DNA of 64,000 bases from Bispira polyomma (GCA_965649765.1 OZ287749.1:44640001-44704000), one strand, 5' to 3'. Shown: positions 19,901 through 59,565, numbered from the stretch's first letter. Notes: a model not told the origin generated them from the sequence alone. Numbers and translations: made by a program.

Positions 19901-20019
19901 TCGCAAATTAGTTACTTCTCTGTACAAACACCAGATTCTCTGTTATACTGATCAGTCTTCCACCTGTTGTCGATCAGTGAACACATACTGCAGGATTTTT
20001 TTAATGGAGAATTTTAATT

Positions 20020-40460: not shown

Positions 40461-40829
40461 TGTGACGTCTGCGAGCCAGATATTAGCCTAGGTTTCCATG
40501 TAGCCGATATCGATTTTGGCCTACATCAAAGATATAGACGTTTGGATATAGACTTTTATTCTTCCATGCAACTGATAAAATTTATGTTTCTGTGTGTCTC
40601 ATTTTATTGGAATCACGTTTCAAAAACACATATTGCACAAAAATAACCAAAAATTGGCCAGATTTGCCAATTTTTTTTAACTCGCTGACCCAAAAAATGT
40701 GAAGCCTCTGCCGATATCTGATCTCATCTGATACATGGAAGTTTCTACACTGTGAGTATTGGGATTAAAAAAAAAATCAGGTTAGGGTTGTATGTATTGG
40801 ATACTCCTTTCTCAAAGGGCTACATTGGC

Positions 40830-41217
40830 TACCTGTCAAGTACCGCATCATTTTCAAACTGTAAACCTATGTCAGCCCCCATATCTTGCCTCATTGTTGT
40901 CTTTCAGCAGACTTACCAGGGAAAACAGAATTTCAGTCTCTGATACCAGGACCAGTAAATGGATTGGATCCTATGCCTTCTCTGTTGCAGTACATACCCT
41001 ATGGAATAATTTTCCTATCCAATATACGATCCCAGGAAACACTCTCTGGCATTAGAAGTAACCTTAAGACCCATCTCTTGACCCTCGCTTACCCTCCATG
41101 AACATCATTTTCCTCCTCGTCACCCCAATCACGAATTTGCTTTGGAAATGATTTTGCGCTTCAGAAGATGCCTGGCATCAATAAGGAGCATTAAAAATCT
41201 ATCATATCATATCATAC
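40830..41217 (+). mobile_element. L2-clade LINE 3' end
   Basis: PPYLASLL..GSYAFSVAVHTLWNNFP and IRSNLKTHLLTLAYPP* C-terminal motifs, 3' UTR, (tatca)n tail. Confidence 0.8.
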
Positions 41218-41288
41218 ATGAAAGCTTATAGGTTTAGTTTGACATATTACTTCTTTATATTTCAGTAGAGCTGACATTGTACGACAAG

Positions 41289-41355
41289 ATGGCACTGAGT
41301 AGTGCCCGTGTTACCAGAAGTACTACCATAGTGCTACTGCTGCTGGTGGCCATAT
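41289..41355 (+). CDS. Signal-peptide exon MALSSARVTRSTTIVLLLLVAI
   Basis: ttcag acceptor at 41265, caagATGG start context, hydrophobic core, gtgagt phase-1 donor in frame with the 45274 acceptor (LCQESKS/QSTC). Confidence 0.82.
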
Positions 41356-44300
41356 GTGAGTGACTTTGTTTTATTTATAGCTTTTTTTAGACCGAGTTTT
41401 CTGTCCTTGACAATGCATTGATTTTTTTTTCTGATGGTATGCATAACGAGGACAGAGTTGTTTACTATAGCAAATCGTTGTAAATGTGTAAAAACACCAA
41501 TAACAGAAAAACTATCATCTTTCCATTTAGTCTGTGGTTGTATATTGAATAATCAAATAGCTGTACACAATATTATAACTTATGGCCAACCAAAAAGTAC
41601 TTGATTAATGAAATATTATTATTTTAAAATATTGCGGTATATTTCCGTTGAACAGAATATAATAAACTGCCGTGTCAGATTTACAATGATTTGCTAATAA
41701 AAATCAAAGTATTATCGAGGACAGAAAACTTGGTCTGAGCATTTGTCTGTCTCTCTACTCCTGTTTATTGTATGTAATACAGTAGAATCTCTACTATCTG
41801 AAAACTGTTGGGGGAGCAAGATTTTGTTTGGTAAATAGGAGAGGGCATAATAAGTTTATCAAATCAAGTTTTTAGAAAATAGAAGTTTGGATAATAGAGG
41901 TTCTACTGTGCTATAGAAGTGTTGTGAATCAATGTTTTACTGTATTTTATGTGCATAAGTCAAATCATAGAGAGACTATATTTATTCATATTTTGTAATA
42001 TTTCATTAAAGGTAATAATGCACCAAATACTGTATATATGGTTAACAACACAAGGACTTGTTTATCTATTTAGTCTATCACAGGTACAATTAAAAGTAAA
42101 TTTAATATTAATTCCTAGCTAAAATAATGGGGTATTTGTTCAAACAATAAATAACATATGTATGTATATTAGCCAAAAGGTAACAAGGGCCTGTAATCGC
42201 GAAAGGGCTAAGCCTGGATTTAGACTTTACTTAAGCCTTTTGTCTTAACTTTTTTGGGGAAAAAGGCTAGGACTTTGTCTTAGACTTATCTTATTGTCTT
42301 AGAAATATCAAACAATCCGAACTCTAACCTGTCATGAATCAAACAATAAGTCATATAATTCCTGATATTTTGAATCATAAATTATCTGAAGGGGCTTAGC
42401 CAGTCTTAAGTCAAAATTTAATGAATTAAAAAAAATTTAAATTGATATTCATTTTATTTTTACTTTGTGACGTTCATATAGGCCAGAATATTTATAGAAT
42501 ATATTATTGTGTGTAAAAATATAAATAATATTGTATTATATTGTGTAATATTGTAAATAAAACAATACAAGTTAATCTCACCATAATCTTAGCTAAGTTT
42601 TTTTTTGTGAATACCATTTAAGACCAAAACTTAGCTGAAACCAAAGTCTTAGATTTAAATTGGAACTTGGCCTCAGTTTTGGCTAAGTCGAAGCCTGTTA
42701 GTGAATATGAGCCCATGGCCCATATTCACTAATGGACTTAGCCAAGTCTTAGGCTTAAAAGTACTATACTTTTGTGCTAGATTATAGCCTAAGACTTGGC
42801 TAAGTCTGTCGGTAAATACGGTCCCTGAGAAACAAGCTCCATCTTACAGAAGTGTAACTTTTCACTATAGTGTATCAATCTTCTCCGTCATACAGGTTCA
42901 ATAGTGACATAAAATGACAAAATTAAGTGAAATTTTATGCTAACCAAAATTTGCACCCATACAATACAGGAGTGGACAGCTTACAGGACAGCGATAGCGG
43001 ACAGTAACTTAAAACAACAAAGTCATCTGTAAATATAAAGTACTTATAACACTAATTTTATTGTAATACAGACTTTGCATCCAAAGTGGGTCAGATTACC
43101 TGTTAAATGGATAAAATGTGTACATTTTAAGTTACTGTCCGCAGTGGCTGTCCCATCCACTAAGCTGGCCACCCGTGTATATACCCTGTATTTTATATAA
43201 TAATAGCGCTAGGGGAGGTAGGGGACGGGGGGGTGTTCAATTTTTCCAAAAGGGGGAATTATGATTAGAGAAAGCAATGTCAATGGCGAATAGGGGTCGG
43301 AATACCCTGACTTGTGACTAAATTTCAAAGCATACAAGTTGGTGTCCAACAATAACTGTAAAGGTGATTCATGATTAAATGCAGTAAAATACATAGATCT
43401 GCTGAAATATTGCCATTCATAATCTCAAAATCTTTTAAAAAGAGAACGGCTATTGTTAGGGAGAGGGCGCTTAATACAAAGCATACAGTATGTAATGCTT
43501 ATTTAAGGTTAAGGAGAGGGGGGGGGTTAGAGGGGGTTGGGACGGCTATTATTTCTGAAGTGGGGTGAAGTGGGGTGTATTACAAAAAACATGGTATGTA
43601 ATATTTGTCACCTATTTTATAACTGGGGAGTGACATTAGTTTTTGTACCAGAGGCTTGTATTCCAACTAAATGTCACATCCCAATCTATATCATTACAGC
43701 ATGGATCCTTTTGAGTTGTAACAAGCAAAGGTATTTGGGTTGTGCAGTACCACATGTGGCTTCCTCCGTTACTCTGTTCAGTGTAAATATATTTTATTAA
43801 GTGCAAGGAGTATGTTAAATCGGAATTTCCTGAATTATTTTATAACCATAAAGTCGAAAACTATAATGCAGTTGAGAGTGGAGACACTTGTCCCAGAATA
43901 ACAGAAAACTACATAGACCCACGTCAATAAAATTATTGCATGTCTTGTCAAAACAAAAGTAAAGGTCAAAACCATGGTTTAAGCAGTACATTAATTTTAT
44001 GGAAAAATTCTGTGCAAATTAAATAACAAAATACTATTGCCTGTGATGTAATAGAACTGCACAATAAAAAGTAAAAAATAATTCAACATCTTCACGATAC
44101 ATAAAATTAGTACGTCTAAACTAATGACAGATATATCAAATTTGGTTGTTAATGCAATACTGCAATGCATGTTCACTATCTGGAAATTAAATCTGTCACT
44201 CTTGTAAAAATTGAACCATGTTTTAAGAAATGAGATCAATGTATATTTTTTTATGTAAAAAGATAATGAGATTTCAAGCAAAGAGTATTAAATGTTTTCA

Positions 44301-47300
44301 GGTCATATAATTTGCACAGGTTTTATTTCATATAGCTTCACATCTTCATAAATGGTAAATATAATAGAGAGAAGCACTAAATGATCAACTTAAAAATTGT
44401 CACAGCTCATGTCATCGAGTATGACCCATGTTACTGAAAAATAGCCTTCTTTCCCCATCTGATTTAGGGTCCCAATTACTTTTAAAAGAACTGGGGTGTT
44501 ATCGGCTTTTGACTAAGCATGTAACAATATTTTTAAAAATCGATGTATTTTTAAAGCAATGTATTGCAATATAAAATTGGAAAATTGGTATTCCGGAAAA
44601 AAAGTTTGAGGCTGTCAGAGCATACAATATATATGTCAACAAAAACAATCAAACATTAAACAATGGATACAGTCTACATTGAATAAATTAAATGTTATTT
44701 CAATTTTCATCACTTTTACAGTTTGTTTACATTCTTCCGAGATCACTGCCTCTGATTTATATTGCACAAGCATTTGCTTATAGACAGAGAAACTCATTTG
44801 ATTTTTATTTAAAACTCGCTTATATTATTGCAAATGTATTACTGGAATATTTGAATACGGCTGGACTATTGCAATATATCGCAATACAGTATTCAAGCAC
44901 AGTACTCACCCCTACTTTTTGACAATATATGATTCAGATGGGTGTAGGTTAGATGCCATATGGCACTATTGGGTGAAGGATTCCTGTGTGGTTGGTTTAA
45001 AAGCCAGAACAATACTCTCAAATTCAACTACCTCTGGTTTGATCATTTATTTCTATGAATATAATATCGTAGTTTTCATATGTAACTGATATTATGTCAT
45101 GTGTCTCTGTCCATGTCAACTTCTTCTTCGAAACTATAAATACAAAAGAGTTTGTGATTCTTTACAGGTATCTTTGGACCATGGCACCATTGATGTTTTA
45201 AAGTCACATAGTTTCAAGAAAGATGAAAATGGCTACAACTTTTATCTTAAATTATTATTTGTCTCATTTTTAGTGTGTCAAGAAAGCAAATCCCAGAGCA
45301 CTTGCAGTGAAGAGGAGTGCTTAATTGAATGTGACCATGGGTTTATGAAAGATGAACATGGTTGTCGCCTGTGCCAGTGCAACGAACAGTCCCCTTGTTC
45401 TGACAACATGTGCATGATAGAATGTGAATATGGCTTTCAGAAAGATAAAAATGGCTGCAACATGTGTGAATGTCAAGAATGCCCCAATACCATGTGTATA
45501 ATGGAATGTGAATTTGGTTTCAAGAAAGATGACAATGGCTGTGACAAGTGTGAATGTGAAGAATGCCCCAATACCATGTGCATGATGGAATGTGAATTTG
45601 GTTTCAAGAAGGATGACAATGGCTGTAACACATGTGAATGTGAACCATGTTCCAAGAAACAATGCAGAAAGTTTTGCCAATATGGATTTAAGAAAGATGA
45701 CAGCGGATGTGAAATATGTGAATGTGAAGAATGCCCCAATACCATGTGTATGATGGAATGTGAATTTGGTTTCAAGAAGGATGACAATGGCTGCAACACG
45801 TGTGAATGTGAGCCATGTTCAAACATTATGTGTGCAATGTATTGTGAGAATGGGTTCAAGAAAGATGACAATGGCTGTGACAAGTGTGAATGTGAAGAAT
45901 GCCCCACTACCATGTGTATGATGGAATGTGAACATGGTTTTAAGAAGGATCAAAATAACTGTGACACTTGTGAATGTGAAGAATGCCCCAATACCATGTG
46001 TATGATGGAATGTGAACATGGTTTTAAGAAGGATCAAAATGGCTGTGACATTTGTGAATGTGAAGAATGCTCCACTACCATGTGTATGATGGAATGTGAA
46101 CATGGTTTTAAAAAGGATCAAAATGGCTGTGACACTTGTGAATGTGAAGAATGCCCCAATACCATGTGCATGATGGAATGTGAACATGGTTTTAAGAAGG
46201 ATCAAAATGGCTGTGACAAGTGTGAATGTGAAGAATGCCTCAATACCATGTGTATGATGGAATGTGAATTTGGTTTTAAGAAGGATGACAATGGCTGTGA
46301 CAAGTGTGAATGTGAACCATGTTTAAACATTATGTGTGCTATGTATTGTGAGTACGGGTTCAAGAAAGATGGCAATGGTTGCAACAAGTGTGAATGTGAA
46401 GAATGCCCCAATACCATGTGTATGATCGAATGTGAATTTGGTTTCAAGAAAGATGGCAATGGCTGCAACACATGTGAATGTGAGCCATGTTCAAACATTA
46501 TGTGTGCAATGTATTGTGAGAATGGGTTCAAGAAAGATGACAATGGCTGTGACAAGTGTGAATGTGAAGAATGCCCCACTACCATGTGTATGATGGAATG
46601 TGAACATGGTTTTAAGAAGGATCAAAATAACTGTGACACTTGTGAATGTGAAGAATGCCCCAATACCATGTGTATGATGGAATGTGAACATGGTTTTAAG
46701 AAGGATCAAAATGGCTGTGACATTTGTGAATGTGAAGAATGCTCCACTACCATGTGTATGATGGAATGTGAACATGGTTTTAAAAAGGATCAAAATGGCT
46801 GTGACACTTGTGAATGTGAAGAATGCCCCAATACCATGTGCATGATGGAATGTGAACATGGTTTTAAGAAGGATCAAAATGGCTGTGACAAGTGTGAATG
46901 TGAAGAATGCCTCAATACCATGTGTATGATGGAATGTGAATTTGGTTTTAAGAAGGATGACAATGGCTGTGACAAGTGTGAATGTGAACCATGTTTAAAC
47001 ATTATGTGTGCTATGTATTGTGAGTACGGGTTCAAGAAAGATGGCAATGGTTGCAACAAGTGTGAATGTGAAGAATGCCCCAATACCATGTGTATGATCG
47101 AATGTGAATTTGGTTTCAAGAAAGATGGCAATGGCTGCAACACATGTGAATGTGAGCCATGTTCAAACATTATGTGTGCAATGTATTGTGAGAATGGGTT
47201 CAAGAAAGATGACAATGGCTGTGACAAGTGTGAATGTGAAGAATGCCCCACTACCATGTGTATGATGGAATGTGAACATGGTTTTAAGAAGGATCAAAAT

Positions 47301-50300
47301 AACTGTGACACTTGTGAATGTGAAGAATGCCCCAATACCATGTGTATGATGGAATGTGAACATGGTTTTAAGAAGGATCAAAATGGCTGTGACATTTGTG
47401 AATGTGAAGAATGCTCCACTACCATGTGTATGATGGAATGTGAACATGGTTTTAAAAAGGATCAAAATGGCTGTGACACTTGTGAATGTGAAGAATGCCC
47501 CAATACCATGTGCATGATGGAATGTGAACATGGTTTTAAGAAGGATCAAAATGGCTGTGACAAGTGTGAATGTGAAGAATGCCCCAATACCATGTGTATG
47601 ATGGAATGTGAATTTGGTTTTAAGAAGGATGACAATGGCTGTGACAAGTGTGAATGTGAACCATGTTTAAACATTATGTGTGCTATGTATTGTGAGTACG
47701 GGTTCAAGAAAGATGGCAATGGTTGCGACAAGTGTGAATGTGAAGAATGCCCCAATACCATGTGTATGATCGAATGTGAATTTGGTTTCAAGAAAGATGT
47801 TAATGGTTGTGACACATGTGAATGTGAACCATGTTCCAAGAAACAATGCAGAAAGTTTTGCCAATATGGATTTAAGAAAGATGACAGCGGATGTGAAATA
47901 TGTGAATGTGAAGAATGTCCCAATACCATGTGTATGATGGAATGTGAACATGGTTTTAAGAGGGATCAAAATGGCTGTGACACTTGTGAATGTGAAGAAT
48001 GCCCCAATACCATGTGTATGATGGAATGTGAATTTGGTTTCAAGAAGGATGACAATGGCTGCAACACGTGTGAATGTGAGCCATGTTCAAACATTATGTG
48101 TGCAATGTATTGTGAGAATGGGTTTAAGAAAGATGACAATGGCTGTGACAAGTGTGAATGTGAAGAATGCCCCAATACCATGTGTATGATGGAATGTGAA
48201 TTTGGTTTCAAGAAAGATGGCAATGGCTGCGACATATGTGAATGTGAGCCATGTTCAAACATTATGTGTGCAATGTATTGTGAGAATGGGTTCAAGAAAG
48301 ATGACAATGGCTGTGACAAGTGTGAATGTGAAGAATGCCCCAATACCATGTGTATGATGGAATGTGAACATGGTTTTAAGAAGGATCAAAATGGCTGTGA
48401 CACTTGTGAATGTGAAGAATGCCCCAATACCATGTGTATGATGGAATGTGAACATGGTTTTAAGAAGGATGACAATGGCTGTGACACTTGTGAATGTGAA
48501 GAATGCCCCAATACCATGTGTATGATGGAATGTGAACATGGTTTTAAGAAGGATCAAAATGGCTGTGACACTTGTGAATGTGAAGAATGCCCCAATACCA
48601 TGTGTATGATGGAATGTGAACATGGTTTTAAGAAGGATCAAAATGGCTGTGACAAGTGTGAATGTGAAGAATGCCTCAATACCATGTGTATGATGGAATG
48701 TGAATTTGGTTTTAAGAAGGATGACAATGGCTGTGACAAGTGTGAATGTGAACCATGTTTAAACATTATGTGTGCTATGTATTGTGAGTACGGGTTCAAG
48801 AAAGATGGCAATGGTTGCGACAAGTGTGAATGTGAAGAATGCCCCAATACCATGTGTATGATCGAATGTGAATTTGGTTTCAAGAAAGATGTTAATGGTT
48901 GTGACACATGTGAATGTGAACCATGTTCCAAGAAACAATGCAGAAAGTTTTGCCAATATGGATTTAAGAAAGATGACAGCGGATGTGAAATATGTGAATG
49001 TGAAGAATGTCCCAATACCATGTGTATGATGGAATGTGAACATGGTTTTAAGAGGGATCAAAATGGCTGTGACACTTGTGAATGTGAAGAATGCCCCAAT
49101 ACCATGTGTATGATGGAATGTGAATTTGGTTTCAAGAAGGATGACAATGGCTGCAACACGTGTGAATGTGAGCCATGTTCAAACATTATGTGTGCAATGT
49201 ATTGTGAGAATGGGTTTAAGAAAGATGACAATGGCTGTGACAAGTGTGAATGTGAAGAATGCCCCAATACCATGTGTATGATGGAATGTGAATTTGGTTT
49301 CAAGAAAGATGGCAATGGCTGCGACATATGTGAATGTGAGCCATGTTCAAACATTATGTGTGCAATGTATTGTGAGAATGGGTTCAAGAAAGATGACAAT
49401 GGCTGTGACAAGTGTGAATGTGAAGAATGCCCCAATACCATGTGTATGATGGAATGTGAACATGGTTTTAAGAAGGATCAAAATGGCTGTGACACTTGTG
49501 AATGTGAAGAATGCCCCAATACCATGTGTATGATGGAATGTGAACATGGTTTTAAGAAGGATGACAATGGCTGTGACACTTGTGAATGTGAAGAATGCCC
49601 CAATACCATGTGTATGATGGAATGTGAACATGGTTTTAAGAAGGATCAAAATGGCTGTGACACTTGTGAATGTGAAGAATGCCCCAATACCATGTGTATG
49701 ATGGAATGTGAACATGGTTTTAAGAAGGATCAAAATGGCTGTGACAAGTGTGAATGTGAAGAATGCCTCAATACCATGTGTATGATGGAATGTGAATTTG
49801 GTTTTAAGAAGGATGACAATGGCTGTGACAAGTGTGAATGTGAACCATGTTTAAACATTATGTGTGCTATGTATTGTGAGTACGGGTTCAAGAAAGATGG
49901 CAATGGTTGCGACAAGTGTGAATGTGAAGAATGCCCCAATACCATGTGTATGATCGAATGTGAATTTGGTTTCAAGAAAGATGTTAATGGTTGCGACACA
50001 TGTGAATGTGAACCATGTTCCAAGAAACAATGCAGAAAGTTTTGCCAATATGGATTTAAGAAAGATGACAGCGGATGTGAAATATGTGAATGTGAAGAAT
50101 GTCCCAATACCATGTGTATGATGGAATGTGAACATGGTTTTAAGAGGGATCAAAATGGCTGTGACACTTGTGAATGTGAAGAATGCCCCAATACCATGTG
50201 TATGATGGAATGTGAATTTGGTTTCAAGAAGGATGACAATGGCTGCAACACGTGTGAATGTGAGCCATGTTCAAACATTATGTGTGCAATGTATTGTGAG

Positions 50301-53300
50301 AATGGGTTTAAGAAAGATGACAATGGCTGTGACAAGTGTGAATGTGAAGAATGCCCCAATGCCATATGTATGATGGAATGTGAATTTGGTTTCAAGAAAG
50401 ATGGCAATGGCTGCGACACATGTGAATGTGAGCCATGTTCAAACATTATGTGTGCTATGTACTGTGAGAATGGGTTCAAGAAAGATGACAATGGCTGTGA
50501 CAAGTGTGAATGTGAAGAATGCCCCAATACCATGTGTATGATGGAATGTGAACATGGTTTTAAGAAGGATCAAAATGGCTGTGACAAGTGTGAATGTGAA
50601 GAATGCCCCAATACCATGTGTATGATGGAATGTGAATTTGGTTTTAAGAAGGATGACAATGGCTGTGACAAGTGTGAATGTGAACCATGTTCAAACATTA
50701 TGTGTGCTATGTATTGTGAGTACGGGTTCAAGAAAGATGGCAATGGTTGCGACAAGTGTGAATGTGAAGAATGCCCCAATACCATGTGTATGATGGAATG
50801 TGAATTTGGTTTCAAGAAAGATGGCAAAGGCTGCAACACATGTGAATGTGAACCATGTTCCAAAAAACAATGCAGAAAGTATTGCCAATATGGATTTAAG
50901 AAAGATGACAGCGGATGTGAAATATGTGAATGTGAAGAATGCCCCAATACCATGTGTATGATGGAATGTGAATTTGGTTTCAAGAAGGATGACAATGGCT
51001 GTGACACATGTGAATGTGAGCCATGTTCAAACATTATGTGTGCGATGTATTGTGAAAATGGGTTCAAGAAAGATGACAATGGCTGTGACAAGTGTGAATG
51101 TGAAGAATGCCCAAACACCATGTGTATGATGGAATGTGAATTTGGTTTCAAGAAGGATCAAAATGGCTGTGACACGTGTGAATGTGAAGAATGCCCCAAT
51201 ACCATGTGCATGATGGAATGTGAATTTGGTTTCAAGAAGAATGTTAATGGTTGCAACACATGTGAATGTGAACCATGTTCCAAAAAACAATGCAGAAAGT
51301 ATTGCCAATATGGATTTAAGAAAGATGACAGTGGATGTGAAATATGTGAATGTGAAGAATGCCCCAATACCATGTGTATGATGGAATGTGAACATGGTTT
51401 TAAGAAGGATCAAAATAGCTGTGACACGTGTGAATGTGAGCCATGTTCAAACATTATGTGTGCAATGTATTGTGAGAATGGGTTCAAGAAAGATGGCAAT
51501 GGCTGCGACATGTGTGAATGTGAAGAATGTCCCAATACCATGTGTATGATGGAATGTGAATTTGGTTTTAGGAAGGATGGCAATGGCTGTAACATGTGTG
51601 AATGTGAAGAATGCCCCAATACCATGTGTATGATGGAATGTGAATTTGGTTTCAAGAAAGATGGCAATGGCTGCGACATATGTGAATGTGAGCCATGTTC
51701 AAACATTATGTGTGCAATGTATTGTGAGAATGGGTTCAAGAAAGATGACAATGGCTGTGACAAGTGTGAATGTGAAGAATGCCCCAATACCATGTGTATG
51801 ATCGAATGTGAATTTGGTTTCAAGAAGGATGACAATGGCTGCGACATTTGTGAATGTGAAGAATGCGCCAATACCATGTGTATGATAGAATGTGAACATG
51901 GATTCAAGAAGGATGTACACGGTTGTGACCACTGTGAATGTGCTGACTTCGCTTGTCCACCTCTGCAGTGCTTTATAAACTGTGAACATGGGATGAAAAA
52001 GGTACTTATATATCATTAAAATGGAGAAAATGATATATGACATGCTAAGCATAGTATTTATTGTTGATAAAACTTTTTAATCAAATTTTATATTATGTTA
52101 TGTCACTTGTTACAATAATGACACTAATGGTTCGAACTGTGGTTTTCACATTTTATCTGATGCCTATATCTGACCAAAAAAATTAGCTGAAACTTGCCGT
52201 ATGTGGGTATTCATAAACCATTTTAAACCAAGATAGAGTGATTAAAAGCCTTTTTTCGAAGGAGCGACTGAATTTTGAAAATAGTTAATATTCATGATTA
52301 TTCCAGCTATTTCTGAAATCTTTAATAAATGCCAAATATCTCCAAAACAAAGTGAGATAGAGGTACTTCAGACTTATTTTAGACCCACCATGGTATAAAG
52401 ATTCTATTAATTAAAAATGTCTTAATCTATTATTTTTGGTATTCATTAACCCGTAATTTCTGTCACTTTCTATTATTCTTTTTTGTATTAATATGATATA
52501 TTGTATTGATATACCATCAAAAAAGAGAAAAACATTCTAATTTTGAAATATAAAGGTACACAAAAAAGCTTTAAAATACAACCAGATCAAATGATACAAA
52601 AGTCAATTTTCAGTGGTTGTAATTGATGCATTGTAGGATGACAAGGGCTGCTTGACCTGTGACTGTTTAGAGAGTCCTGTCTCTTGTTCTGACATTGAGT
52701 GCATGATGGAATGTCCATTCGGTCAGAGAAGAGATGATAATGACTGCAGTCTGTGTTCTTGTAAAGAAAGTGCTTGTGAGGTAACTACAAAATGTTAATT
52801 GTATTGTACTCAAATTTATACTCACTGAATTTGGCTACCTTCATCTGTTATTCAAAGAGCTAATTATCCTTTTCTTGGCAGCCCAAGTACAGCCAACCAG
52901 CCCTAGTAATTTCCATTCCTTTAACTGAAGAGACAGAGATTCAGGGATAAATAATTTATCAATGTTCCCAAGGTTATTTAGCCTGCCACCGAGGATAGGA
53001 CCTGATAATTGAGGACCTCTATTTTAAGTGGTCATCTGAGCCAGTCTGTATCTGTCTGTACCTTATCTCTCAATGCTGGGATTGAACCTAGGTCCACTGG
53101 ATTTCCAAGTGACTGTGTAACTCATTAGAGCACAGTGGAAGATCAATTAAAGAAAACAACAGTTTTCTTCTATAAGCTAGTGATTGTTAATTTAATTAAA
53201 GCCATTGATAGATTGAAATTTTATTTGTTATTATCTAACCACAGTTTTACACAGCTTCTTAATCACATTTGTCTTATTTTAACACAGTGTAATTCATGCA

Positions 53301-56300
53301 AAGTCTATGATATATATTTTAGGGAAAAGTTTGTGCATCAGGTAAGAGGCTTTGGTAAGAGGTTTGTGCCTCAGGTAAAAGCCATTGATATATTGAAAAT
53401 ATATTGAAATTTTATTTGTTATTATCTAACCACAGTTTTACACAGCTTCTTGATCACATTTGTCTTATTTTAACACAGTGTAATCCATGCAAAGTCTATG
53501 ATATATATTCTAGGGAAAAGTTTGTGCCTCAGGTAAGAGGTGTGAAACCAGGAAGTTACCATGTGATAAAACCATGTGCCCTGAGGAAGCTCTCTGTGTC
53601 ACAGAACCAGGTAGGAACAGGCAACATGGAGGGCCTGTGTCAATGGTCTTAAACTCGTACTTAAATGTCACATTAAAAGATTTGCTGATTAATGGAAGTA
53701 GCCTAGACGTTTTAATTCATATTAATGAAGCTTTCAGTAAGAAACCCATATATGCAGAATGTTTATCATACATGAATACAGCCGGACATATTTTGAGATT
53801 TTTAAGTTTTCAATAGGCATTTATATAGTGTGATTACATTGAATCAACAAAGGTACTTGTTCTTCAAGGAGATATAGTCCTACATCATAGCATACATTCT
53901 CATCAAAAAGTAGTTGTCGTTACATCAACGCAAGCTAGTCCAGCTTCTTTGGTTTTTCCTAAATATATAATTACAGAGCCTGGATTTATCTTGTGATGTT
54001 TTGTCAACTATATCATGTATTGTACAATTTCCCCACAACCACCATTTAGTGGTACAACATGTATTTAAAAAGATTGGTATTCATCAATTTTATTGGCTAA
54101 TAATATGGTGAAAAGCATTCTGATTGCCTGGGACTGAGAGTAGATGTCCCAAAAGGGTTGTGGATGATACTTGAGAATCTTTTCTTTGTTCCTTTGTTGA
54201 ACTTGATCTTATTTGACTTTTAGGTGTTTAATCTCTATATAATCTAATGGGAGATTGACAGATTATTTAGTAAAAGTGTTCTATGGTAAAATCTATATGA
54301 TAATCATATGATCATTAGATAAAGACACATTTTTACCCCACAGCCTATATATATATATATAGGTTATGGGGTATTGTTTTTACCTGAAAGGGCAGGCTGG
54401 TAGTGGCTGCTAAAATTTGATCAACCTAGTTCTAGAAAACCGTGAGGCAGAGGAAGTACATATTTAGTCCAAATATTCCTTTGGGGTTATCGGTGTGTAA
54501 CAACATTATGGTCAGATTTCACTTAAAGGCTATGGTTGTTTTGGCATCTCTGATGCTATTTTTTTTTCATGTGGTCAAAACTTTTAAAAAAAGCTTACTT
54601 ATCAAAGTCATTTGCTTTTATTCTTCCAGCAAGTAGTCGCTGCTCTAAAGACACAGATACTGGTGTGTGCAGTAGCAATGGGTTGTCAGTGACGCGTTGG
54701 TTTTATGATAGGAAGAAACAAGAGTGTTCTACATTCAGCTACAGTGGCTGTGGAGGCAATAACAACAACTTCATAACCTCAGATGAGTGTCAGCTTGTTT
54801 GTGAAGGTACCAGCTTCATACAAGTCAACAAAATGTACTTTGTAGTATAATAGCCCTGTGGGCAATGTGTTTCTCCAAAAGGAGGTGGGGGTAGTGGGGT
54901 CTATTATTTCAGAATAGAATGTTGATACATGTGGGTGGGGAAGTATGTTATCCCTAGTAATCATCATGGCATCATCATTTGACTCCATAACTACTATGTC
55001 ATGAAAGATTATCAATGGCGTAGAAATGATTTCCTAGAATTCAAAAGTGAAAAGAAAGAAAATTTGGTAATGACATAGTCTGACACGACACGGCTGTGTG
55101 TCAGCGATTCTGATTGGCCAAAAGCCTTGGTAAAATACTGCATATACCCAATGTCATTGGCTGTTCCATCAGTCCCGCTGCAAACATAATTAAGATGGAA
55201 CAGCCTATGTTTAATTAAGTTTATGACCAAAATATATGATTACTGAAGGGTGTTATTCCTATAAAGACAAATACTGTTTTATTTATTTCTATGTGTTGTG
55301 TATTTTACACCATAAGTAACTGCACAGCTTTCTAGTATCATCCTAACATATATAATTTTATCATTATTGTGATAGATTTTCAGCTTATGCTTATTATTTA
55401 TATCCAAAATCTAAAGATAAGTCACTGCTGTTTACTTTTTATTGTAGCTTTAATCCAAGCTTTATAGTTTTATAACAGTTTTTTTTGTTTTTCTGTCCAG
55501 AAAGTAGGAGACTGACCAAGATCTCTGTCTCAATGAAGTTACTGCATCAAATTCCACCTGTAGAATATGTACACGACGTCTTCCTGAGGTAAGTAATATA
55601 CAAAACTACAACATAAATCAACAGAAAATAAAATGGTCGGTTTTATTAAATAATCAAATATAAATAAAAATGGCCATTTTGAAAACTTCATTTTATGGTT
55701 AAATCATGCTGAACTAAGTAGTAAAATTTTATTTTCTTAAAAGTTAATTATCAAAATGTCCAGACCGCTGTATTTGGGCAACATACAAAAACGTCTAAGC
55801 CTTGCACATTATAAAATCAGTTGATGTCCATATGCGCAAAGAACTACCCATAGGGTTTCAGAAAATGTGTTTTAGTCATTTGGATGGATATGTTATGTTA
55901 ATGAGCAAGTGCTAGATTTTCCGTATTATAGCACATGAAGTGTAGCAATAACAAATAGAGGATTTTTTTAAATTTAACTTCATTTAATCAGAGATGCTTA
56001 GATAGCATAGTTGTAACAATCTTGCCTGCCACCTCTCCCATCTTGGGTTGCAATCTCGGCCATGGTGTTTATGTTAGAAAGTTGGCAAAATACTTGCTTA
56101 AGGCTGGCGGTTTGCCGAGCGAAAAACCTTGACCGGCTACCTAGCTTGGATGGCCTGCACCAGTGAACTGCCCAGCTTTATATGACATGAAGCATGTTGA
56201 AAGCGACATTAAACCCAAAACTAACTAAATAACTATCAAATAAAATACAAAAATGTTTTTAAATACATGGCATTACATTATTTATCTTGTATTTTTCAGT

Positions 56301-59300
56301 TTCTTCCAAAATACACTGAGTCAGTGGATGTTTCTGGAGAAGAACTACTTAATGAATATGCATATGACCCCATTGACCTCAGCACACAGGAAGAGGAAGC
56401 AAGCTGAAGGTGGATTTCAGGAGGTCATTGTCACATTAGATGTTATGGAGGGAGGTCAAACGACACCAACAGAAGCAGTTTCTTTCCTCACAGATAAGGT
56501 AACTAGAACTGTATAGTTTTATTAGAACACATGTTTTCACAAAAGCAGAGGTGGTTTAAATTATAACTACAAGTATATGCCTATTGTTTTAAAGAAGTTC
56601 ACTGGGATATTAATTTCAGTTTTTGTCCATTTCTTTCAAAATTTATACATACCTTTTAAATATAATTCTTTTGTTGGGAATTAATCTTCACCGCTCAACC
56701 CATTATAAAAAATACTTAAATACAGCTAATTTGATGTTTAAAAAATTGCTATCTTTGCACATTGATCTACTCAGTTACTGAGCTTCAACTCGGATCTCAA
56801 AATACTTTGTATCAGTAGACAAGATTAACTTTTTTACATCTTATTAGTGTCCATGCAATGTCACATTAAGCCAGTGACCCAAAAATTCTTATCTTGATTG
56901 CATTCAGGTTGCTGTCCTAATCCTAAAAACTTAGGCCAGTGGCTAGGCCTTTACACTATCCCATACATCAAATCTACTGCCTCTGGGCCATCAAGCCTAT
57001 ATTGATATTACTACCTGTTTATTTAATTCTTTGCTTGTCTTTTTATACATATACAGATTCAGACCAAGACTTCCACATTTTACTACAAAACCTACCTGGT
57101 TACTGTGGATCCTCAGAGCTTGTCCCTTGTAAGTTACTATGATGACACAGAGAAGCCTGTTCCCACTACCTTCAAACCCGAGAAAGGCATGGAGCAGTAT
57201 CAGATTATCATTGTGATTGTGGCCATAGCTTTAGCCCTGGCCTTTATTGCAGCAGTTATTGCTGTGGTAAGTTCAATTTGAAGTTTTGTAAACAAACCTT
57301 AAGAGCAAAGGCTAGTGGTCTCTGTGGCTTAGTAGTTATGACGTTCAACTTTGGAGCATGTGGTCCCAGGATCGATGCTTACTGCAGGTCTGAAGATTAT
57401 TGTTTTGGGCAAGATGTATAAATGTGGTACCTAGCTGGTTGCCAATGGGCATTTTGTTTGTGCAACATGTGACATAATGGCTGGTATGCTCCATTAGGGA
57501 ACTGAGATTGAACAATGAAGAAGTAGACAAACCCATTGGAGGTGATATATATATTAGATTATAAACTATACATTTAGTTGTAGACTTTTGACACATTGGA
57601 AGCCTGGGGTCAGTTCAGACAAAGTAAAATTTAGAAAATATGGTGAAATATTTCTGGAGTTTGTCTTGTTTTACACAAAAGTATTAAATGGTTTTAATTT
57701 ACAGTATATATTATCTAAACGCAGAGAGAGCAAGATATTATTTGTGTCACAGAAGGTTCCTAAAATAGAAGAGGCATTCTAATAAACTTGGTAGCATGAA
57801 ATTGAATTTATAAGTGATTGTGGTATAATTAAGTCAATTTAAAGTCACATAGGTAACACCAAAGATATCCTTTGAGTATTAGACATCAGGTAGATTTTAA
57901 AAGACAATTTTATATGCTGTTTCAATATCTCAAATTATTTGATATATATATACGACAAAAAACACCTGAACAGTGAAACATCTTTTAGACATCTTTTGTG
58001 TGACAAATTTCTTGTGCTTTCCAGTTTGTTTGCCTGAGGCACAAAAAGAGTGGTGGTTATGAAGTGGACTACAAACAGACATCCCAGAATGGCAAGGTAA
58101 GATATCTAAATGGCTGGTATTTTGTATTTCATTTAAAGAGAAAACAAAGTAACCCCAAACTCAAGTACTTAACTCAAATAAAGGCAATTTAGATGTCCAT
58201 TACAGAGGTAATAACCCACCCTACAATGACCATGTACTTTAAACAGACTTTTACTCCTTTTCGTGTCATAGAGTAAGTAGTATAAAATAATACATTGTTG
58301 ATATATTCACTGTAGCCAAAGTTATGGTGAGTTTAGCTAAAGTTTCGGTGAATATCTTTCTTCAAGAAATATACCATATGTGACGTATATGTAGATGTTT
58401 GACACACATACACAACAGGATTTTTCTACGGTGAGTGTTGTGTCAATATTTTGTCCTCTGTCTAACCATGTTATGTATTTGTGGTCATTGGCTTTTTTTT
58501 CTCTTCTGTAAATATTTCACTGTGTATTTAAAGTAAACAGAGTCTGTGCCAAGTCTTTTTCCTTTGTTGTGAGACAATAGAAAGTGTCAGAAATATGAGA
58601 TAAAGTAATTGTGTACATTACATATAGTTTTTTATATAAGTGCATGTGCTTATATTGTCACGCACACCCACAGAAAACAATGTTAAAAATAAGACCAAAA
58701 CAAATTCTTCTCCGTACTTTGTGCTGCAATAAATTTACTCAGTATAGCATAACATGTACTTGAATAGGGCGTCACAAACAGTACTCTACTTATGTATGCT
58801 GAGTATATTTATTGGATTTATTTATATTGTGTAATTGACCTTCTACCTCTGCAGTCATGGGTTTGATTCTCGCCCATGTGGCATGTATGTGGGAAAGTTG
58901 GTAGTAGACTTGCTGAAGGTTGATGGTTTGCAGTAAAGAAAATCTTCCAAACATCCTGTACTGTTTTCCTCCACAAATAAACTGCCCATTGCAATTTAAT
59001 ATTCATTTATTAAAAGCCATGTTAAATCAATAGGTGAATAAATAAGGTAAAGTGTTTTATGTTTTCCTCATATATGTGTCGTACAATAAGTTTGAATCTA
59101 TTGAACATTGAAATTTTAAATAAATGTGATATAAATAATACTTTTTGTTGACAAGAAAAGGTTCAGAGTTAAACTATTATGACATCATGTATGACATAGT
59201 GAAGATAATAATCAACCTTCTCCACTTTGTATGGAAAAATTAATCACAAATTCACCAAATATCCAAAGTATATCACCTATAACTGCCAGTAATTCTAAGC

Positions 59301-59565
59301 TAAATTATATTACTTTTAGCAATAAAATATATATTTTATCATAACAAGCGTAGTTTTTAATCATTTTGCATTCAAGTTTGTCCTAATTAATTGATTTTAG
59401 CAAGGTTTTAGTGTGATGAATTTTAGTGTCAAAATTCAGGTTAATAACTATATTAACATACATGTATTTCTTTTGTAGGTGCCTTCATTTGACAATGCTG
59501 TATATGACCAGCCACCATATGTAGTTTATCCTTCAGACACAAAGGAGAAAATTCCACTGGAATAA
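41289..59565 (+). CDS. Giant type-I membrane protein, ~2622 aa: signal peptide + 81 antistasin-like domains + FOLN-like + Kunitz + SEA-like + TM + FDNAVY tail; join(41289..41355,45274..52001,52637..52780,53514..53610,54630..54806,55501..55588,56300..56498,57057..57266,58025..58096,59479..59565)
   Basis: All nine introns are GT-AG with matching phases (1,0,0,1,1,2,0,0,0); 7869 nt, open to TAA. An antistasin unit split by the 52002-52636 intron is completed across it (CPPLQCFINCEHGMKK/DDKGCLTCDC). TM segment IIIVIVAIALALAFIAAVIAV/FVCL is followed by RHKK. Confidence 0.88.
41780..41908. mobile_element. Tc1/mariner-type MITE
   Basis: ta|cagtagaatctctactatc ... gataatagaggttctactg. Confidence 0.75.
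42187..42826. mobile_element. Two adjacent Harbinger-type MITEs (~42187-42714 and ~42717-42826)
   Basis: gggcctgtaatc..gaatatgagccc then ggcccatattcac..gtaaatacggtccc; the second has a perfect 21-bp inverted repeat gacttagccaagtcttaggct. Confidence 0.65.
45274..52001 (+). CDS. 6728-nt exon encoding 79 complete antistasin-like (PF02822-type) domains plus the start of an 80th
   Basis: Within the 2306-aa ORF; unit C-x4-C-x3-C-xxGFKKDxNG-C-x2-C-x-C; tttttag acceptor and AAG|gtactt donor. Confidence 0.95.
45480..51947 (+). repeat. Coding tandem array: 77 x 84-bp units with 672-bp (8-unit) and 1092-bp (13-unit) higher-order repeats
   Basis: Unit starts at 45480 and 51864 are exactly 76x84 apart; shadow ORFs recur at 45819/46491/47163 (672) and 47546/48638/49730 (1092). 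Confidence 0.95.
52637..52780 (+). CDS. Exon: end of antistasin unit 80 and unit 81
   Basis: DDKGCLTCDCLESPVSCSDIECMMECPFGQRRDDNDCSLCSCKESACE, 144 nt, ttgtag/gtaact. Confidence 0.93.
52830..53138 (-). mobile_element. tRNA-SINE in intron
   Basis: Minus-strand ggttcaatccc B box and core shared with the 34250 and 61235 copies. Confidence 0.65.
53198..53540 (+). repeat. Tandem duplication of intron end, acceptor and first ~27 nt of the 53514 exon
   Basis: aaagccattgata...tagggaaaagtttgtgc(a/c)tcaggtaagagg occurs twice, ~190 bp apart. Confidence 0.9.
53514..53610 (+). CDS. Exon: follistatin-N-like Cys module
   Basis: (CE)GKVCASGKRCETRKLPCDKTMCPEEALCVTEP, 97 nt, phase 0-1; domain label is by Cys spacing only. 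Confidence 0.8.
54630..54806 (+). CDS. Exon: BPTI/Kunitz domain
   Basis: CSKDTDTGVCSSNGLSVTRWFYDRKKQECSTFSYSGCGGNNNNFITSDECQLVC; FxYxGCxGNxNNF signature; symmetric phase 1-1 exon. Confidence 0.95.
55501..55588 (+). CDS. Exon: stalk part 1
   Basis: Long pyrimidine tract ending ccag, ESRRLTKISVSMKLLHQIPPVEYVHDVFL, gtaagt donor. Confidence 0.85.
56300..56498 (+). CDS. Exon: stalk part 2 with RKRK
   Basis: tttttcag acceptor, FFQNTLSQWMFLEKNYLMNMHMTPLTSAHRKRKQAEGGFQEVIVTLDVMEGGQTTPTEAVSFLTDK, gtaact donor. Confidence 0.87.
57057..57266 (+). CDS. Exon: juxtamembrane region and transmembrane helix
   Basis: IQTKTSTFYYKTYLVTVDPQSLSLVSYYDDTEKPVPTTFKPEKGMEQYQIIIVIVAIALALAFIAAVIAV, gtaagt donor. Confidence 0.9.
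58025..58096 (+). CDS. Exon: TM end and cytoplasmic juxtamembrane segment
   Basis: FVCLRHKKSGGYEVDYKQTSQNGK, tttccag/gtaaga. Confidence 0.88.
59479..59565 (+). CDS. Last coding exon with FDNAVY motif
   Basis: VPSFDNAVYDQPPYVVYPSDTKEKIPLE*; ttttgtag acceptor; AATAAA downstream near 60011 and 60464. Confidence 0.88.
   Translation: MPSFDNAVYDQPPYVVYPSDTKEKIPLE

What the first reader, a model, noticed from the sequence alone, without database searches (positions are those of the whole stretch)
45274..52780. Three interleaved reactive-site classes form a specificity code along the array
In antistasin-family inhibitors P1 follows the second Cys of the unit. My manual count over 81 units is Met x54 (CMMEC/CMIEC, like elastase-inhibiting guamerin CMIFC), Ala x18 (CAMYC), Arg x6 (CRKFC/CRKYC, starts 45648, 47832, 48924, 50016, 50856, 51276; CRKYC is the piguamerin loop as I recall it), and one each Leu, Ile and Phe. 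Each class keeps its own surrounding sequence (PNTM/SNIM/SKKQ) despite strong homogenisation. Inference: one polypeptide covers elastase/chymotrypsin-like and trypsin-like proteases in a set ratio.
Basis: partly seen in the sequence, partly recalled or inferred. Interest (0 to 1): 0.75.

Follow-up and report, generated by a model that had tools for sequence, protein, structure and literature searches.

The report
Giant membrane-anchored antistasin inhibitor array
One huge exon of an unnamed invertebrate genome encodes 81 tandem antistasin-type protease-inhibitor modules of three old reactive-site types, apparently on a membrane-anchored protein, and their order and ratio come mostly from very recent block duplications.

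Summary
There are 81 six-cysteine units, and the residue after Cys2 is Met 54, Ala 18, Arg 6, Leu/Ile/Phe 1 each. All six Arg starts are as given. The units are Pfam Antistasin. Alignments to solved antistasin, hirustasin, bdellastasin and guamerin put that residue on their reactive-site position, and a paper passage confirms CRKYC = piguamerin and CMIFC = guamerin.

The three classes are old whole-unit lineages. Synonymous sites between them are saturated. They separate on a tree built without the loop codons. The Ala- and Met-type loops recur in paralogs and in database proteins.

The "set ratio" is not supported as a selected code. The order comes from nested 8-unit and 13-unit higher-order repeats whose copies differ by 0-8 of 672 and 1 of 1092 bases. 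The same scan had already noted these repeats on this stretch (s1-596260).

New here is a 10-exon model: signal peptide, the array, a Kunitz domain, a transmembrane helix and a short tail. It rests on homology and reading-frame phases only, because no RNA run was found.

Inhibition and class-specific targets remain inference. Arrays with mixed P1 residues are common in this family (49 of 87 proteins with at least 5 units).

The parts
41289..41355 (+). Putative exon 1 coding part: start codon and signal-peptide-like MALSSARVTRSTTIVLLLLVAI, with a phase-1 donor TAT|GTGAGT
   Evidence: It is the only candidate from a heuristic scan of 30001-45273 for ATG + hydrophobic stretch + phase-1 donor. Sequence read. 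Inference only; no RNA support.
45274..52001 (+). Giant exon 2 (6728 nt): units 1-79 and the first 16 residues of unit 80
   Evidence: Acceptor ttttag|TG and donor AAG|gtactt. Units. Pfam Antistasin.
45816..47831 (+). Three copies of an 8-unit (672-nt) higher-order repeat, class order A M M M M M A M
   Evidence: copies 1 and 2 are identical (0 of 672 differences); copy 3 differs at 8 of 672.
47832..51107 (+). 13-unit (1092-nt) higher-order repeat (R M M A M followed by the 8-unit block): two near-identical copies, then a stretch at the third-copy position that no longer matches in this register
   Evidence: copies 1 and 2 differ at 1 of 1092. The third position differs at 125-126 of 1092 when compared in register, because it has lost units.
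45648..45725 (+). Arg-class unit (SKKQ-CRKFC)
47832..47909 (+). Arg-class unit (CRKFC)
48924..49001 (+). Arg-class unit (CRKFC)
50016..50093 (+). Arg-class unit (CRKFC)
50856..50933 (+). Arg-class unit (CRKYC, the same five residues as the piguamerin loop)
51276..51353 (+). Arg-class unit (CRKYC)
52637..52780 (+). Exon 3: the end of unit 80 and all of unit 81 (CSDIECMMEC...)
   Evidence: Pfam Antistasin E 2.9e-6.
53514..53610 (+). Exon 4: short Cys-rich module (GKVCASGKRCETRKLPCDKTMCPEEALCVTEP)
   Evidence: Splice sites. It matches the corresponding part of P0024 by eye. The only Pfam hit is a weak EGF-like one, 17.1 bits against a cut-off of 27.
54630..54806 (+). Exon 5: Kunitz/BPTI domain
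   Evidence: PF00014, E 2.6e-18, 66.4 bits. tblastn with P0024 and 23 other database proteins. Splice sites.
55501..55588 (+). Exon 6: juxtamembrane region, part 1
   Evidence: Phase 1 to 2, fitting its neighbours. Resembles P0024 residues about 262-290 by eye.
56300..56498 (+). Exon 7: juxtamembrane region, part 2
   Evidence: tblastn with P0024 residues 293-353, E 3.3e-5. Sequence. No Pfam family.
57057..57266 (+). Exon 8: stalk and transmembrane helix (IIIVIVAIALALAFIAAVIAV)
   Evidence: tblastn with P0024 residues 348-383. Sequence, translation.
58025..58096 (+). Exon 9: start of the cytoplasmic tail (FVCLRHKKSGGYEVDYKQTSQNGK)
   Evidence: Resembles the P0024 tail by eye.
59479..59565 (+). 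Exon 10: end of the tail, containing FDNAVY, and the stop codon

Best explanation
The stretch is the main coding exon, plus one small exon, of a predicted 10-exon gene. The exon lengths sum to 7869 nt, or 2622 codons plus a stop. The predicted product is a type I membrane protein: a signal peptide, a rod of 81 back-to-back antistasin-type modules with only two residues between them, a small Cys-rich module, one Kunitz domain, a stalk of about 130 residues, one transmembrane helix and a short tail.

Shown:
- family membership;
- all 486 cysteines are intact;
- there is strong purifying selection on the scaffold;
- three unit lineages are old at the DNA level and differ chiefly in the loop around the reactive-site position.

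Inferred:
- Each module acts as a standard-mechanism (substrate-like, tight-binding) serine-protease inhibitor head.
- Met, Ala, Leu, Ile and Phe heads (75 of 81) would face elastase-, chymotrypsin- or subtilisin-like enzymes. Arg heads (6 of 81) would face trypsin- or kallikrein-like enzymes.
- The whole would be a protease-trapping brush on a cell surface.

The order and ratio of the classes are by-products of recent unequal-crossover duplication of 8- and 13-unit blocks. They are not a fixed code.
For: Family and fold:
- Pfam Antistasin, E 8.5e-83.
- Matches to solved antistasin (E 2e-4), bdellastasin (E 2.9e-4), hirustasin, gigastasin and guamerin, with cysteines and the reactive-site position in register.
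- An AlphaFold model of one Arg unit, built from 80 aligned units, has pLDDT 82.7. All 8 of its 8 Foldseek PDB matches are antistasin-family inhibitors, five of them in entries titled as protease complexes. Rmsd is 1.2-1.7 A over 23-29 columns.

The P1 rule in print.

Selection:
- Between classes, nonsynonymous divergence is 0.40-0.58 in the loop and 0.10-0.16 in the scaffold.
- Cys codons show 0 nonsynonymous changes, while their synonymous differences are near or past saturation.
- Within the Met class, scaffold dN/dS is 0.22.

Classes are lineages. On a tree built without loop codons, P1 changes 3 times, the minimum possible. The shuffled mean is 11.2, and 0 of 200 shuffles are as low. The Arg clade has support 99 and the Ala group 87.

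Loops recur elsewhere:
- CAMYC occurs in 12 database proteins (3.8 expected), CMMEC in 5 (1.0 expected) and CMIEC in 4 (0.3 expected).
- Paralogs in the same genome also carry CMIEC and CAMYC.
- Across 549 distinct database units, P1 is among the three most variable non-Cys positions inside the unit (3.69 bits). R, A and M are its commonest residues.

Context:
- A Kunitz domain lies in the same model.
- At least 24 related database proteins also carry a Kunitz domain.

Gene model: all splice sites are AG/GT, the phases chain, and the total length is divisible by 3. It is co-linear with P0024.

Block duplication.
Against: - No expression evidence. The only three runs holding the stretch are genomic contigs that cover introns evenly.
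- No biochemical data exist for any unit.
- Foldseek E-values are about 1 because the model has only 30 residues.
- The four-unit model failed, with pLDDT 46, so the geometry and accessibility of heads in the rod are unknown. With two-residue linkers, neighbouring heads could hardly all bind a protease at once (inference).
- dN/dS between classes cannot be computed because synonymous sites are saturated.
- The exact Arg loops CRKFC and CRKYC are not enriched in database units (1 each, 1.3-1.5 expected).
- The Met loops carry an acidic P2' Glu, unlike guamerin's Phe, and the rod has a net charge of about -304. That would also suit a structural or cation-binding role.
- The Kunitz domain has Ser after its second Cys and a loop 3 residues longer than the Pfam model, so it may not be a canonical inhibitor.
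- Exon 1 and the membrane anchor rest on homology and heuristics.
- No Pfam family was found for the stalk.
Confidence: 0.6

Rival explanations
1. Structural rod or spacer. The array would be a stiff, disulfide-locked, acidic stalk of a membrane protein with mucin-like architecture, or a component of an adhesive or secreted matrix. The reactive-site classes would be inherited relics with no inhibitory role.
For: - 46 of 81 loops are the same CMMEC, which is more copies than stoichiometric inhibition seems to need.
- A giant single-exon tandem array followed by a stalk, a transmembrane helix and a short tail is the layout of transmembrane mucins (recalled).
- For P0024 residues 255-486, the nearest feature cluster is 'mucin-16-like', SEA domain, score 0.89. 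The tool itself calls this a lead only.
- Proteins with antistasin domains are found in sea-star footprints, limpet adhesive mucus and mussel byssus (passages).
Against: - Divergence between classes is concentrated in the binding loop and the scaffold is conserved.
- Exact loops recur across paralogs and other proteins.
- The classes carry typical P1 residues.
- A Kunitz domain sits in the same gene.
- There is no Pro/Ser/Thr-rich sequence and there are 0 N-x-S/T sequons in 2242 residues.
- No SEA Pfam hit.
- The adhesion papers themselves read the domain as a protective inhibitor.
Confidence: 0.2
2. Metal or cation binding. The Cys-x-Cys, Met-rich, highly acidic repeats would sequester metals or calcium, as was proposed for the mussel byssal antistasin-like protein.
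For: - Composition is Cys 21.3%, Met 8.6%, Glu 15.5%, with pI 4.27.
- A passage of PMC6508894 proposes metallothionein-like metal binding for a byssal protein with 30-aa, 6-Cys repeats.
Against: - The 6-Cys spacing is that of solved family members. In those, as I recall, all six cysteines are disulfide-bonded.
- A signal peptide and an extracellular position are predicted.
- The model superposes on the solved inhibitors.
- The metal idea in the paper is a suggestion, not a measurement.
Confidence: 0.07
3. Growth-factor or ligand trap of the CRIM1 type. It would be a membrane protein whose antistasin-like modules bind signalling ligands rather than proteases.
For: Some database relatives are named 'cysteine-rich motor neuron 1 protein-like' (P0011; P0014). 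The predicted protein is type I membrane.
Against: - No IGFBP or VWC domains were found. The only VWC match is 18.1 bits against a cut-off of 27.6.
- The automatic names rest on the shared antistasin domain.
- The partner domain here is Kunitz.
Confidence: 0.05
4. Not a working gene. It would be an unexpressed or recently dead array, or an assembly artefact of a repeat.
For: No RNA run holds it. Block copies are identical, which could come from mis-assembly. No close ortholog exists in the protein sets.
Against: - The 2242-codon exon is open, and the exon phases chain to a stop.
- Cys codons show 0 nonsynonymous changes despite many synonymous ones.
- Genomic contigs of three runs match 51500-57499 with no differing letters and a single one-base insertion, carried by a minority of the depth, at 54349. 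They may, however, come from the sample that was assembled.
Confidence: 0.08

Closest known systems
Leech single-domain antistasin-type inhibitors: guamerin, piguamerin, hirustasin, bdellastasin (the PDB entries matched)
   Same: The 6-Cys module has the same spacing as antistasin's, and the same GF-KD-NGC core. The reactive-site residue follows Cys2. The CRKYC loop is identical to piguamerin's, and CMIEC is one residue away from guamerin's CMIFC. The single-unit model superposes at 1.2-1.7 A.
   Different: The leech proteins are about 50-residue secreted peptides with an extra N-terminal 4-Cys subdomain. Here there are 81 six-Cys modules in a row with no N-subdomains, on a predicted membrane protein. 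The P2' residue is acidic in the Met class. No characterised member with Ala at P1 turned up in my searches.
Hydra antistasin (Holstein et al. 1992, as described in a passage of PMC7851590)
   Same: It is built only of repeats of the 25-26-residue, 6-Cys unit that matches the C-terminal part of the leech domain.
   Different: Six repeats against 81. As I recall it is secreted, with no Kunitz domain and no membrane anchor.
Large predicted antistasin arrays of echinoderms and others (for example P0012, Antedon mediterranea, 5095 aa; P0002, Asterias; P0003, Patiria)
   Same: They have many antistasin units in one protein and often mix P1 residues: 49 of 87 database proteins with at least 5 units mix basic with hydrophobic or small P1 residues. 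P0016 alternates CAMFC and CRMHC four times.
   Different: Identity is at most 40-45% over long stretches. The most units found in any of the 173 proteins fetched is 35. Partner domains differ (WAP, thyroglobulin-1, Ig, FN3). None of them is characterised.
P0024 (486 aa) and P0026 (575 aa), unnamed metagenome-derived proteins
   Same: P0024 shares the C-terminal layout: antistasin units, a small Cys-rich module, Kunitz, stalk, transmembrane helix and tail. It carries CMIEC and CMMEC alongside Arg loops. P0026 has CAMYC, CMIEC twice and CMMHC, then a transmembrane helix.
   Different: Only 4-6 units are visible, and both look cut at the 5' end. P0026 has thyroglobulin-1 repeats instead of Kunitz. 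Identity to the query is 56-63% over the matched stretches.
Membrane-anchored Kunitz inhibitors HAI-1/HAI-2 (abstract start of PMC12940448 in the listing)
   Same: A type I membrane protein that presents canonical serine-protease inhibitor domains at the cell surface.
   Different: They have two Kunitz heads against 81 antistasin heads plus one Kunitz. They are not homologous outside the Kunitz domain.
Multi-headed inhibitors with mixed specificities (Bowman-Birk, ovomucoid/ovoinhibitor, LEKTI, the Nicotiana alata six-domain precursor) - recalled, from no call
   Same: One polypeptide carries heads for trypsin-like enzymes and heads for chymotrypsin- or elastase-like enzymes.
   Different: They belong to different folds and have 2-15 heads. 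Several are cut into single heads, whereas here the two-residue linkers (EE/EP) contain no dibasic site. Only 3 KR/RR pairs occur anywhere in the 2242 residues.

Membership tests
Antistasin family (Pfam PF02822) | Profile match above the curated cut-off | tested here: met
   272.8 bits against a cut-off of 21.2, with 10 stretches in the first 289 residues. Unit 81 scores 28.1 bits. The own-genome scan lists matches all along the exon.
Antistasin family (Pfam PF02822) | Six cysteines spaced C-x4-C-x3-C-x10-C-x2-C-x-C, as in antistasin itself | tested here: met
   81 of 81 units. Aligned cysteine for cysteine with 1skz.
Antistasin family (Pfam PF02822) | Fold of the solved members | tested here: met
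   Single-unit model with pLDDT 82.7. 8 of 8 Foldseek PDB matches are family members, with TM 0.59-0.72 by query length and rmsd 1.2-1.7 A. E-values are 0.96-4.0 because the model is so short. The four-unit model was unusable.
Antistasin family (Pfam PF02822) | Disulfide pairing 1-4, 2-5, 3-6 (recalled from hirustasin) | not tested
   The model coordinates were not inspected.
Antistasin family (Pfam PF02822) | Reactive-site residue directly after Cys2, with a residue type that fits a serine-protease S1 pocket | tested here: met
   Position shown by alignment. Residues are M, A, R, L, I, F. Literature rule.
Antistasin family (Pfam PF02822) | Measured inhibition of a serine protease | not testable with these tools
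   Needs expression and kinetics.
Kunitz/BPTI (PF00014), exon 5 | Profile match above the cut-off with six cysteines | tested here: met
   66.4 bits against a cut-off of 21.
Kunitz/BPTI (PF00014), exon 5 | Canonical binding loop with a basic or large hydrophobic P1 after the second Cys (recalled from BPTI) | tested here: inconclusive
   Ser follows the second Cys. The match spans 56 residues on a 53-position profile, so the loop is 3 residues longer.
Transmembrane mucin / SEA-domain proteins | SEA domain next to the membrane | tested here: not met
   No Pfam family for exons 7 and 8, nor for that part of P0024. The only support is a feature-space neighbour, 'mucin-16-like, SEA', at 0.89, below the tool's 0.9 line.
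Transmembrane mucin / SEA-domain proteins | Pro/Thr/Ser-rich glycosylated tandem repeats | tested here: not met
   Ser + Thr + Pro make up 8.8% of exon 2, with 0 N-x-S/T sequons.
CRIM1-like | IGFBP N-terminal domain and VWC repeats beside the antistasin-like domains (recalled) | tested here: not met
   VWC scores 18.1 bits against a cut-off of 27.6 on exon 3 only. Nothing of this kind in the other exons scanned. The region upstream of exon 2 was not scanned with Pfam.

The most novel reading that the evidence does not exclude
A cell-surface 'protease-trap brush'. It would be a membrane-anchored rod, possibly more than 100 nm long, made of 81 inhibitor heads. The dosage of each head class (elastase/chymotrypsin/subtilisin-type against trypsin-type) would be retuned quickly by satellite-like unequal crossover of 8- and 13-unit blocks inside a coding exon. 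The array would then be a length- and composition-polymorphic defence locus against microbial, parasite or digestive proteases.
Probability: 0.2. Interest if true: 0.7.

Novelty: new variant of a known kind. Interest (0 to 1): 0.5.

Why it matters
If the heads are active, this would be the most multi-headed canonical protease inhibitor I have seen: 81 units, against 35 in the largest of the 173 database relatives fetched. It would also be the first antistasin array placed on a membrane anchor. My four paper searches on antistasin-like or antistasin proteins listed nothing of that kind.

It also offers a clean natural case for asking how reactive-site diversity is kept while a coding tandem array is homogenised. 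Here it is kept because homogenisation works on multi-unit blocks, so old unit lineages are copied together.

Practically, the three loop types are ready-made, small, disulfide-locked scaffolds for specificity studies. One is identical to piguamerin's loop and one is a residue away from guamerin's.

Tried and rejected
Expression. The look-up of sequencing runs (kind rna) returned 3 runs from one study, none on record as RNA. Laying them on 51500-57499 showed contigs crossing introns at even depth. They are therefore genomic and neither support nor contradict the splice model. The listed 'joints' have 20-25-letter sides and non-GT/AG ends, and I take them for repeat noise.

Orthologs. The whole-exon word search gave 11 hits at 27-40% identity. 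HMMER with a 13-unit block against 1.84 billion representatives gave 657 hits, the best long one at 40% identity and short fragments up to 70%. The C-terminal part of P0024 gave only Kunitz-based hits. There is no ortholog with which to test conservation of the class order.

Organism. It was not determined. Named relatives are a crinoid, sea stars, a gastropod and annelids.

Structure. The four-unit AlphaFold model failed, with pLDDT 46.4, so nothing can be said about head spacing.

Pfam. No family was found for exons 7 and 8, and only a sub-threshold EGF-like hit for exon 4.

dN/dS between classes. It cannot be computed because pS is 0.41-1.08. Within the Met class, loop dN/dS is 1.65, but this rests on 0.17 synonymous differences per pair, so I do not claim positive selection.

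Rows left out of counts:
- Searches used the 77 in-register units (units 3-79 of 81). Units 1, 2, 80 and 81 were left out.
- Searches used only database units with the exact spacing (549 distinct units from 173 proteins).
- One search dropped two W/V-rich low-complexity regex matches in L008 before alignment A2.
- The 173 proteins were fetched because they resemble this array, so family-wide tallies are biased towards it.

Exons were translated and searched one by one.

Supplements were not opened. Supplementary Figures S5-S6 of PMC11897028, which show the loops, were not seen. Only the text passage was read.

Earlier-findings look-ups by place returned only the higher-order-repeat note and two notes on the RIT gene. 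The look-up by words returned nothing.

Full report
WHAT IS THERE

The + strand carries an open frame of 2306 codons at 45099-52019. Most of it is an 84-nt tandem repeat: period 84, 77.8 copies, score 7255. The array stands out from the window by strong G-over-C skew (0.37-0.39, against -0.12 to 0.12 in every bin outside it).

A regex for C-x4-C-x3-C-x10-C-x2-C-x-C finds 79 units in this frame. A looser regex over all six frames of the window finds units nowhere else, except one at 52685 on the + strand.

The sequence shows a good acceptor at 45273|45274 (ttttag|TG) and a good donor at 52001|52002 (AAG|gtactt). The next exon, 52637-52780, completes unit 80 and holds unit 81. That makes 81 units and 486 cysteines, all present.

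The residue after the second cysteine is Met 54, Ala 18, Arg 6, Leu 1, Ile 1, Phe 1.

FAMILY AND THE MEANING OF THE POSITION

The first ten units match Pfam Antistasin at E 8.5e-83, and unit 81 matches at E 2.9e-6.

I searched a four-unit stretch against all PDB sequences. It matches antistasin (1skz, E 2e-4), bdellastasin, hirustasin, gigastasin and guamerin. In the printed alignments the unit's cysteines fall on theirs. The residue after Cys2 falls on the R of CRVHC and CRIRC, the K of CKVKC and the M of CMIFC.

A passage of PMC11897028 names these residues as the reactive ones. It gives CRKYC as the piguamerin loop and CMIFC as the guamerin loop.

A passage of PMC6265900 states the rule: members with Arg or Lys at P1 inhibit trypsin-like enzymes. 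Guamerin, with Met, inhibits chymotrypsin- and elastase-like enzymes but not trypsin-like ones.

A no-template AlphaFold model of one Arg unit, built from an alignment of 80 units from the window and from paralogs, reached pLDDT 82.7. All 8 of its 8 Foldseek matches in the PDB are antistasin-family inhibitors, five of them in entries titled as protease complexes, at rmsd 1.2-1.7 A. The E-values are only about 1 because the model has 30 residues. A four-unit model failed (pLDDT 46.4).

THE CLASSES ARE OLD LINEAGES; THE ORDER IS YOUNG

Written as subtypes, the 77 in-register units read abcb | deeeebfg x3 | cebdb+deeeebfg x2 | a less regular tail.

- The first two 8-unit blocks are identical over 672 nt, and the third differs at 8 sites.
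- The two 13-unit blocks differ at 1 of 1092 sites.
- Only 37 distinct DNA units, encoding 30 distinct proteins, exist among the 77.

It means that most of the ratio and order was produced by a few very recent block duplications.

The classes themselves are ancient.

- Between classes, the proportion of synonymous differences is 0.41-1.08, which is saturated.
- Nonsynonymous divergence is 0.40-0.58 in the ten non-Cys codons from the residue before Cys1 to P5', but only 0.10-0.16 in the twelve scaffold codons.
- Cys codons show no nonsynonymous change, although TGT/TGC differences are frequent.
- Within the Met class, the scaffold has dN/dS 0.22 (all).

A maximum-likelihood tree built from the 45 columns left after removing the loop codons still groups the classes. 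P1 changes 3 times, the minimum possible. The shuffled mean is 11.2, and 0 of 200 shuffles are as low. Arg units form a branch with support 99 and Ala units one with support 87. The columns are few and many forks are open.

So class identity belongs to whole units, and there is no sign that loops were exchanged between lineages. That each class 'keeps its own surrounding sequence' is true. It is also what block-wise homogenisation would give without any extra force.

The interleaving is real. None of the 24 Ala/Arg units has an Ala/Arg neighbour. The chance of that under random order is 5.6e-5 for all 81 units. It is 5e-4 to 9e-4 after removing the duplicated blocks. This fits an ancestral two-unit module. 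It could also serve to space unlike heads. I cannot tell which.

THE SAME LOOPS ELSEWHERE

The genome (about 1.04 Gb in 75 contigs) has other antistasin loci (131 profile matches listed, the large majority of them in this exon). I fetched eleven of them.

- One at C9:6.13 Mb has five one-unit exons, all with MMCMIEC.
- Another has CAMYC, CMMYC and CMIEC.
- A 652-codon frame on C13 mixes L, R, D, T, A and R.

Among 549 distinct exact-spacing units from the 173 database proteins fetched:

- CAMYC occurs in 12 proteins (3.8 expected from single-position frequencies), CMMEC in 5 (1.0) and CMIEC in 4 (0.3).
- CRKFC and CRKYC occur once each, about as expected.
- P1 (3.69 bits), P3 (3.71) and P2' (3.72) are the most variable positions between the first and last Cys of the unit.
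- R (119), A (54) and M (52) are the commonest P1 residues.

Units of P0020, P0026, P0107 and P0132 share the Ala-class context (MCAMYCE[NH]GFKKD). Arg units of P0022, P0024 and P0034 share the GCEIC feature of the Arg class.

Mixed arrays are common. 49 of 87 database proteins with at least 5 units carry both basic and hydrophobic or small P1 residues. P0016 alternates CAMFC and CRMHC. All these proteins were retrieved by likeness to this array, so the tallies lean towards it.

THE GENE AROUND IT

P0024 is a 486-residue protein from an unnamed metagenome assembly, 56% identical over its matched stretch. Its layout is antistasin units, a small Cys-rich module, a Kunitz domain, about 130 residues, a transmembrane helix and a tail. 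Its parts are found downstream of the array, in order.

| Exon | Coordinates | Content | Evidence |
|---|---|---|---|
| 4 | 53514-53610 | small Cys-rich module | |
| 5 | 54630-54806 | Kunitz domain, PF00014 E 2.6e-18 | |
| 6 | 55501-55588 | stalk | |
| 7 | 56300-56498 | stalk | tblastn E 3.3e-5, |
| 8 | 57057-57266 | IIIVIVAIALALAFIAAVIAV helix | |
| 9 | 58025-58096 | tail | |
| 10 | 59479-59565 | tail and stop | |

Every junction is AG/GT and the phases chain (1-0, 0-0, 0-1, 1-1, 1-2, 2-0, 0-0, 0-0).

A heuristic scan of the 15 kb upstream gave a single candidate for a signal-peptide exon with the required phase-1 donor. It lies at 41289-41355 and reads MALSSARVTRSTTIVLLLLVAI.

The ten exon lengths sum to 7869 nt, a multiple of three. 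I translated and searched the exons one at a time and never joined them.

The model is homology and inference. The three public runs that hold the stretch are genomic: their contigs run through the introns at even depth.

The array part is 21.3% Cys, 15.5% Glu and 8.6% Met. Its pI is 4.27 and its net charge about -304. It has no N-x-S/T sequon and only 3 KR/RR pairs. I therefore expect an uncut, unglycosylated, acidic rod.

The stalk has no Pfam family. Its nearest feature-space neighbour is a SEA-domain mucin cluster at 0.89, which is only a lead.

HOW IT MOST LIKELY WORKS

Shown:

- an intact, selected array of antistasin modules;
- loop-centred divergence among three old lineages;
- a Kunitz domain and a hydrophobic anchor in a co-linear, in-phase exon chain.

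Inferred: each module presents a canonical loop, held by disulfides on both sides, to the active site of a serine protease. Its P1 residue sets the target class. 75 heads would be for elastase-, chymotrypsin- or subtilisin-like enzymes and 6 for trypsin- or kallikrein-like enzymes. The protein would stand on a cell surface as a protease trap.

The ratio is historical, not a code, and is probably polymorphic.

Rivals, in descending order, are a structural rod, an unexpressed gene, metal binding, and CRIM1-like ligand binding. They are weighed in their own sections.

COMPARISON AND NOVELTY

The module is an ordinary member of a known family. Multi-unit and mixed-P1 antistasin proteins are known or predicted. 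Multi-headed inhibitors with mixed specificity are textbook material.

What differs here:

- the scale: 81 units, against at most 35 in the 173 relatives fetched;
- the satellite-like block structure inside a coding exon;
- the predicted membrane anchor with a Kunitz partner. None of my four paper searches on antistasin-like or antistasin proteins listed such a protein, and no close ortholog exists in the protein sets.

I rate it a new variant of a known kind, with interest 0.5.

Noticed in passing
window 53320-53349 and 53511-53540: The acceptor and first 27 bases of exon 4 occur twice, 191 bp apart, with 1 mismatch in 30. The upstream copy sits in a duplicated intron segment. If it were used as an acceptor, the frame would stop after about 11 codons. 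This is a possible decoy splice site, like the one noted earlier for the RIT gene in this window.
   Followed up: partly
window 45099-45273: Just upstream of the exon 2 acceptor, in the same frame, the intron reads ...SHSFKKDENGYNF..., which looks like a decayed antistasin unit without its cysteines. Many tblastn alignments run into it.
   Followed up: no
window 54630-54806: The Kunitz domain has Ser after its second Cys and a binding loop three residues longer than the Pfam model (56 residues on 53 profile positions). In P0024, by my reading of its sequence, the corresponding loop has the usual length and Tyr follows the second Cys.
   Followed up: partly
window 59479-59565: The cytoplasmic tail contains FDNAVY. 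As I recall, this is one residue away from the FDNPVY internalisation signal of the LDL receptor. It may be an endocytosis motif.
   Followed up: no
window 52900-53099, 54300-54499, 55100-55299: Intron segments where the summed contig depth is 8-27 times that of neighbouring bins in all three genomic runs. They are probably dispersed repeats.
   Followed up: no
L005 (G000:C9:6132000-6141999): A paralog with five exons, each holding one antistasin unit with the same MMCMIEC loop, plus one Lys-type unit (CKMFC). L010 (C9:7.99 Mb) looks like a smaller copy.
   Followed up: no
window 20175-20450 (- strand) and the 20001-22000 bin: GC rises to 0.44, and there is a Val/Ala/Ser-rich low-complexity open frame.
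   Followed up: no
window 63708-63998: An open frame at the window's end reads like an exon of a steroid 5-alpha-reductase-type membrane enzyme. This is by eye only, from the translation.
   Followed up: no
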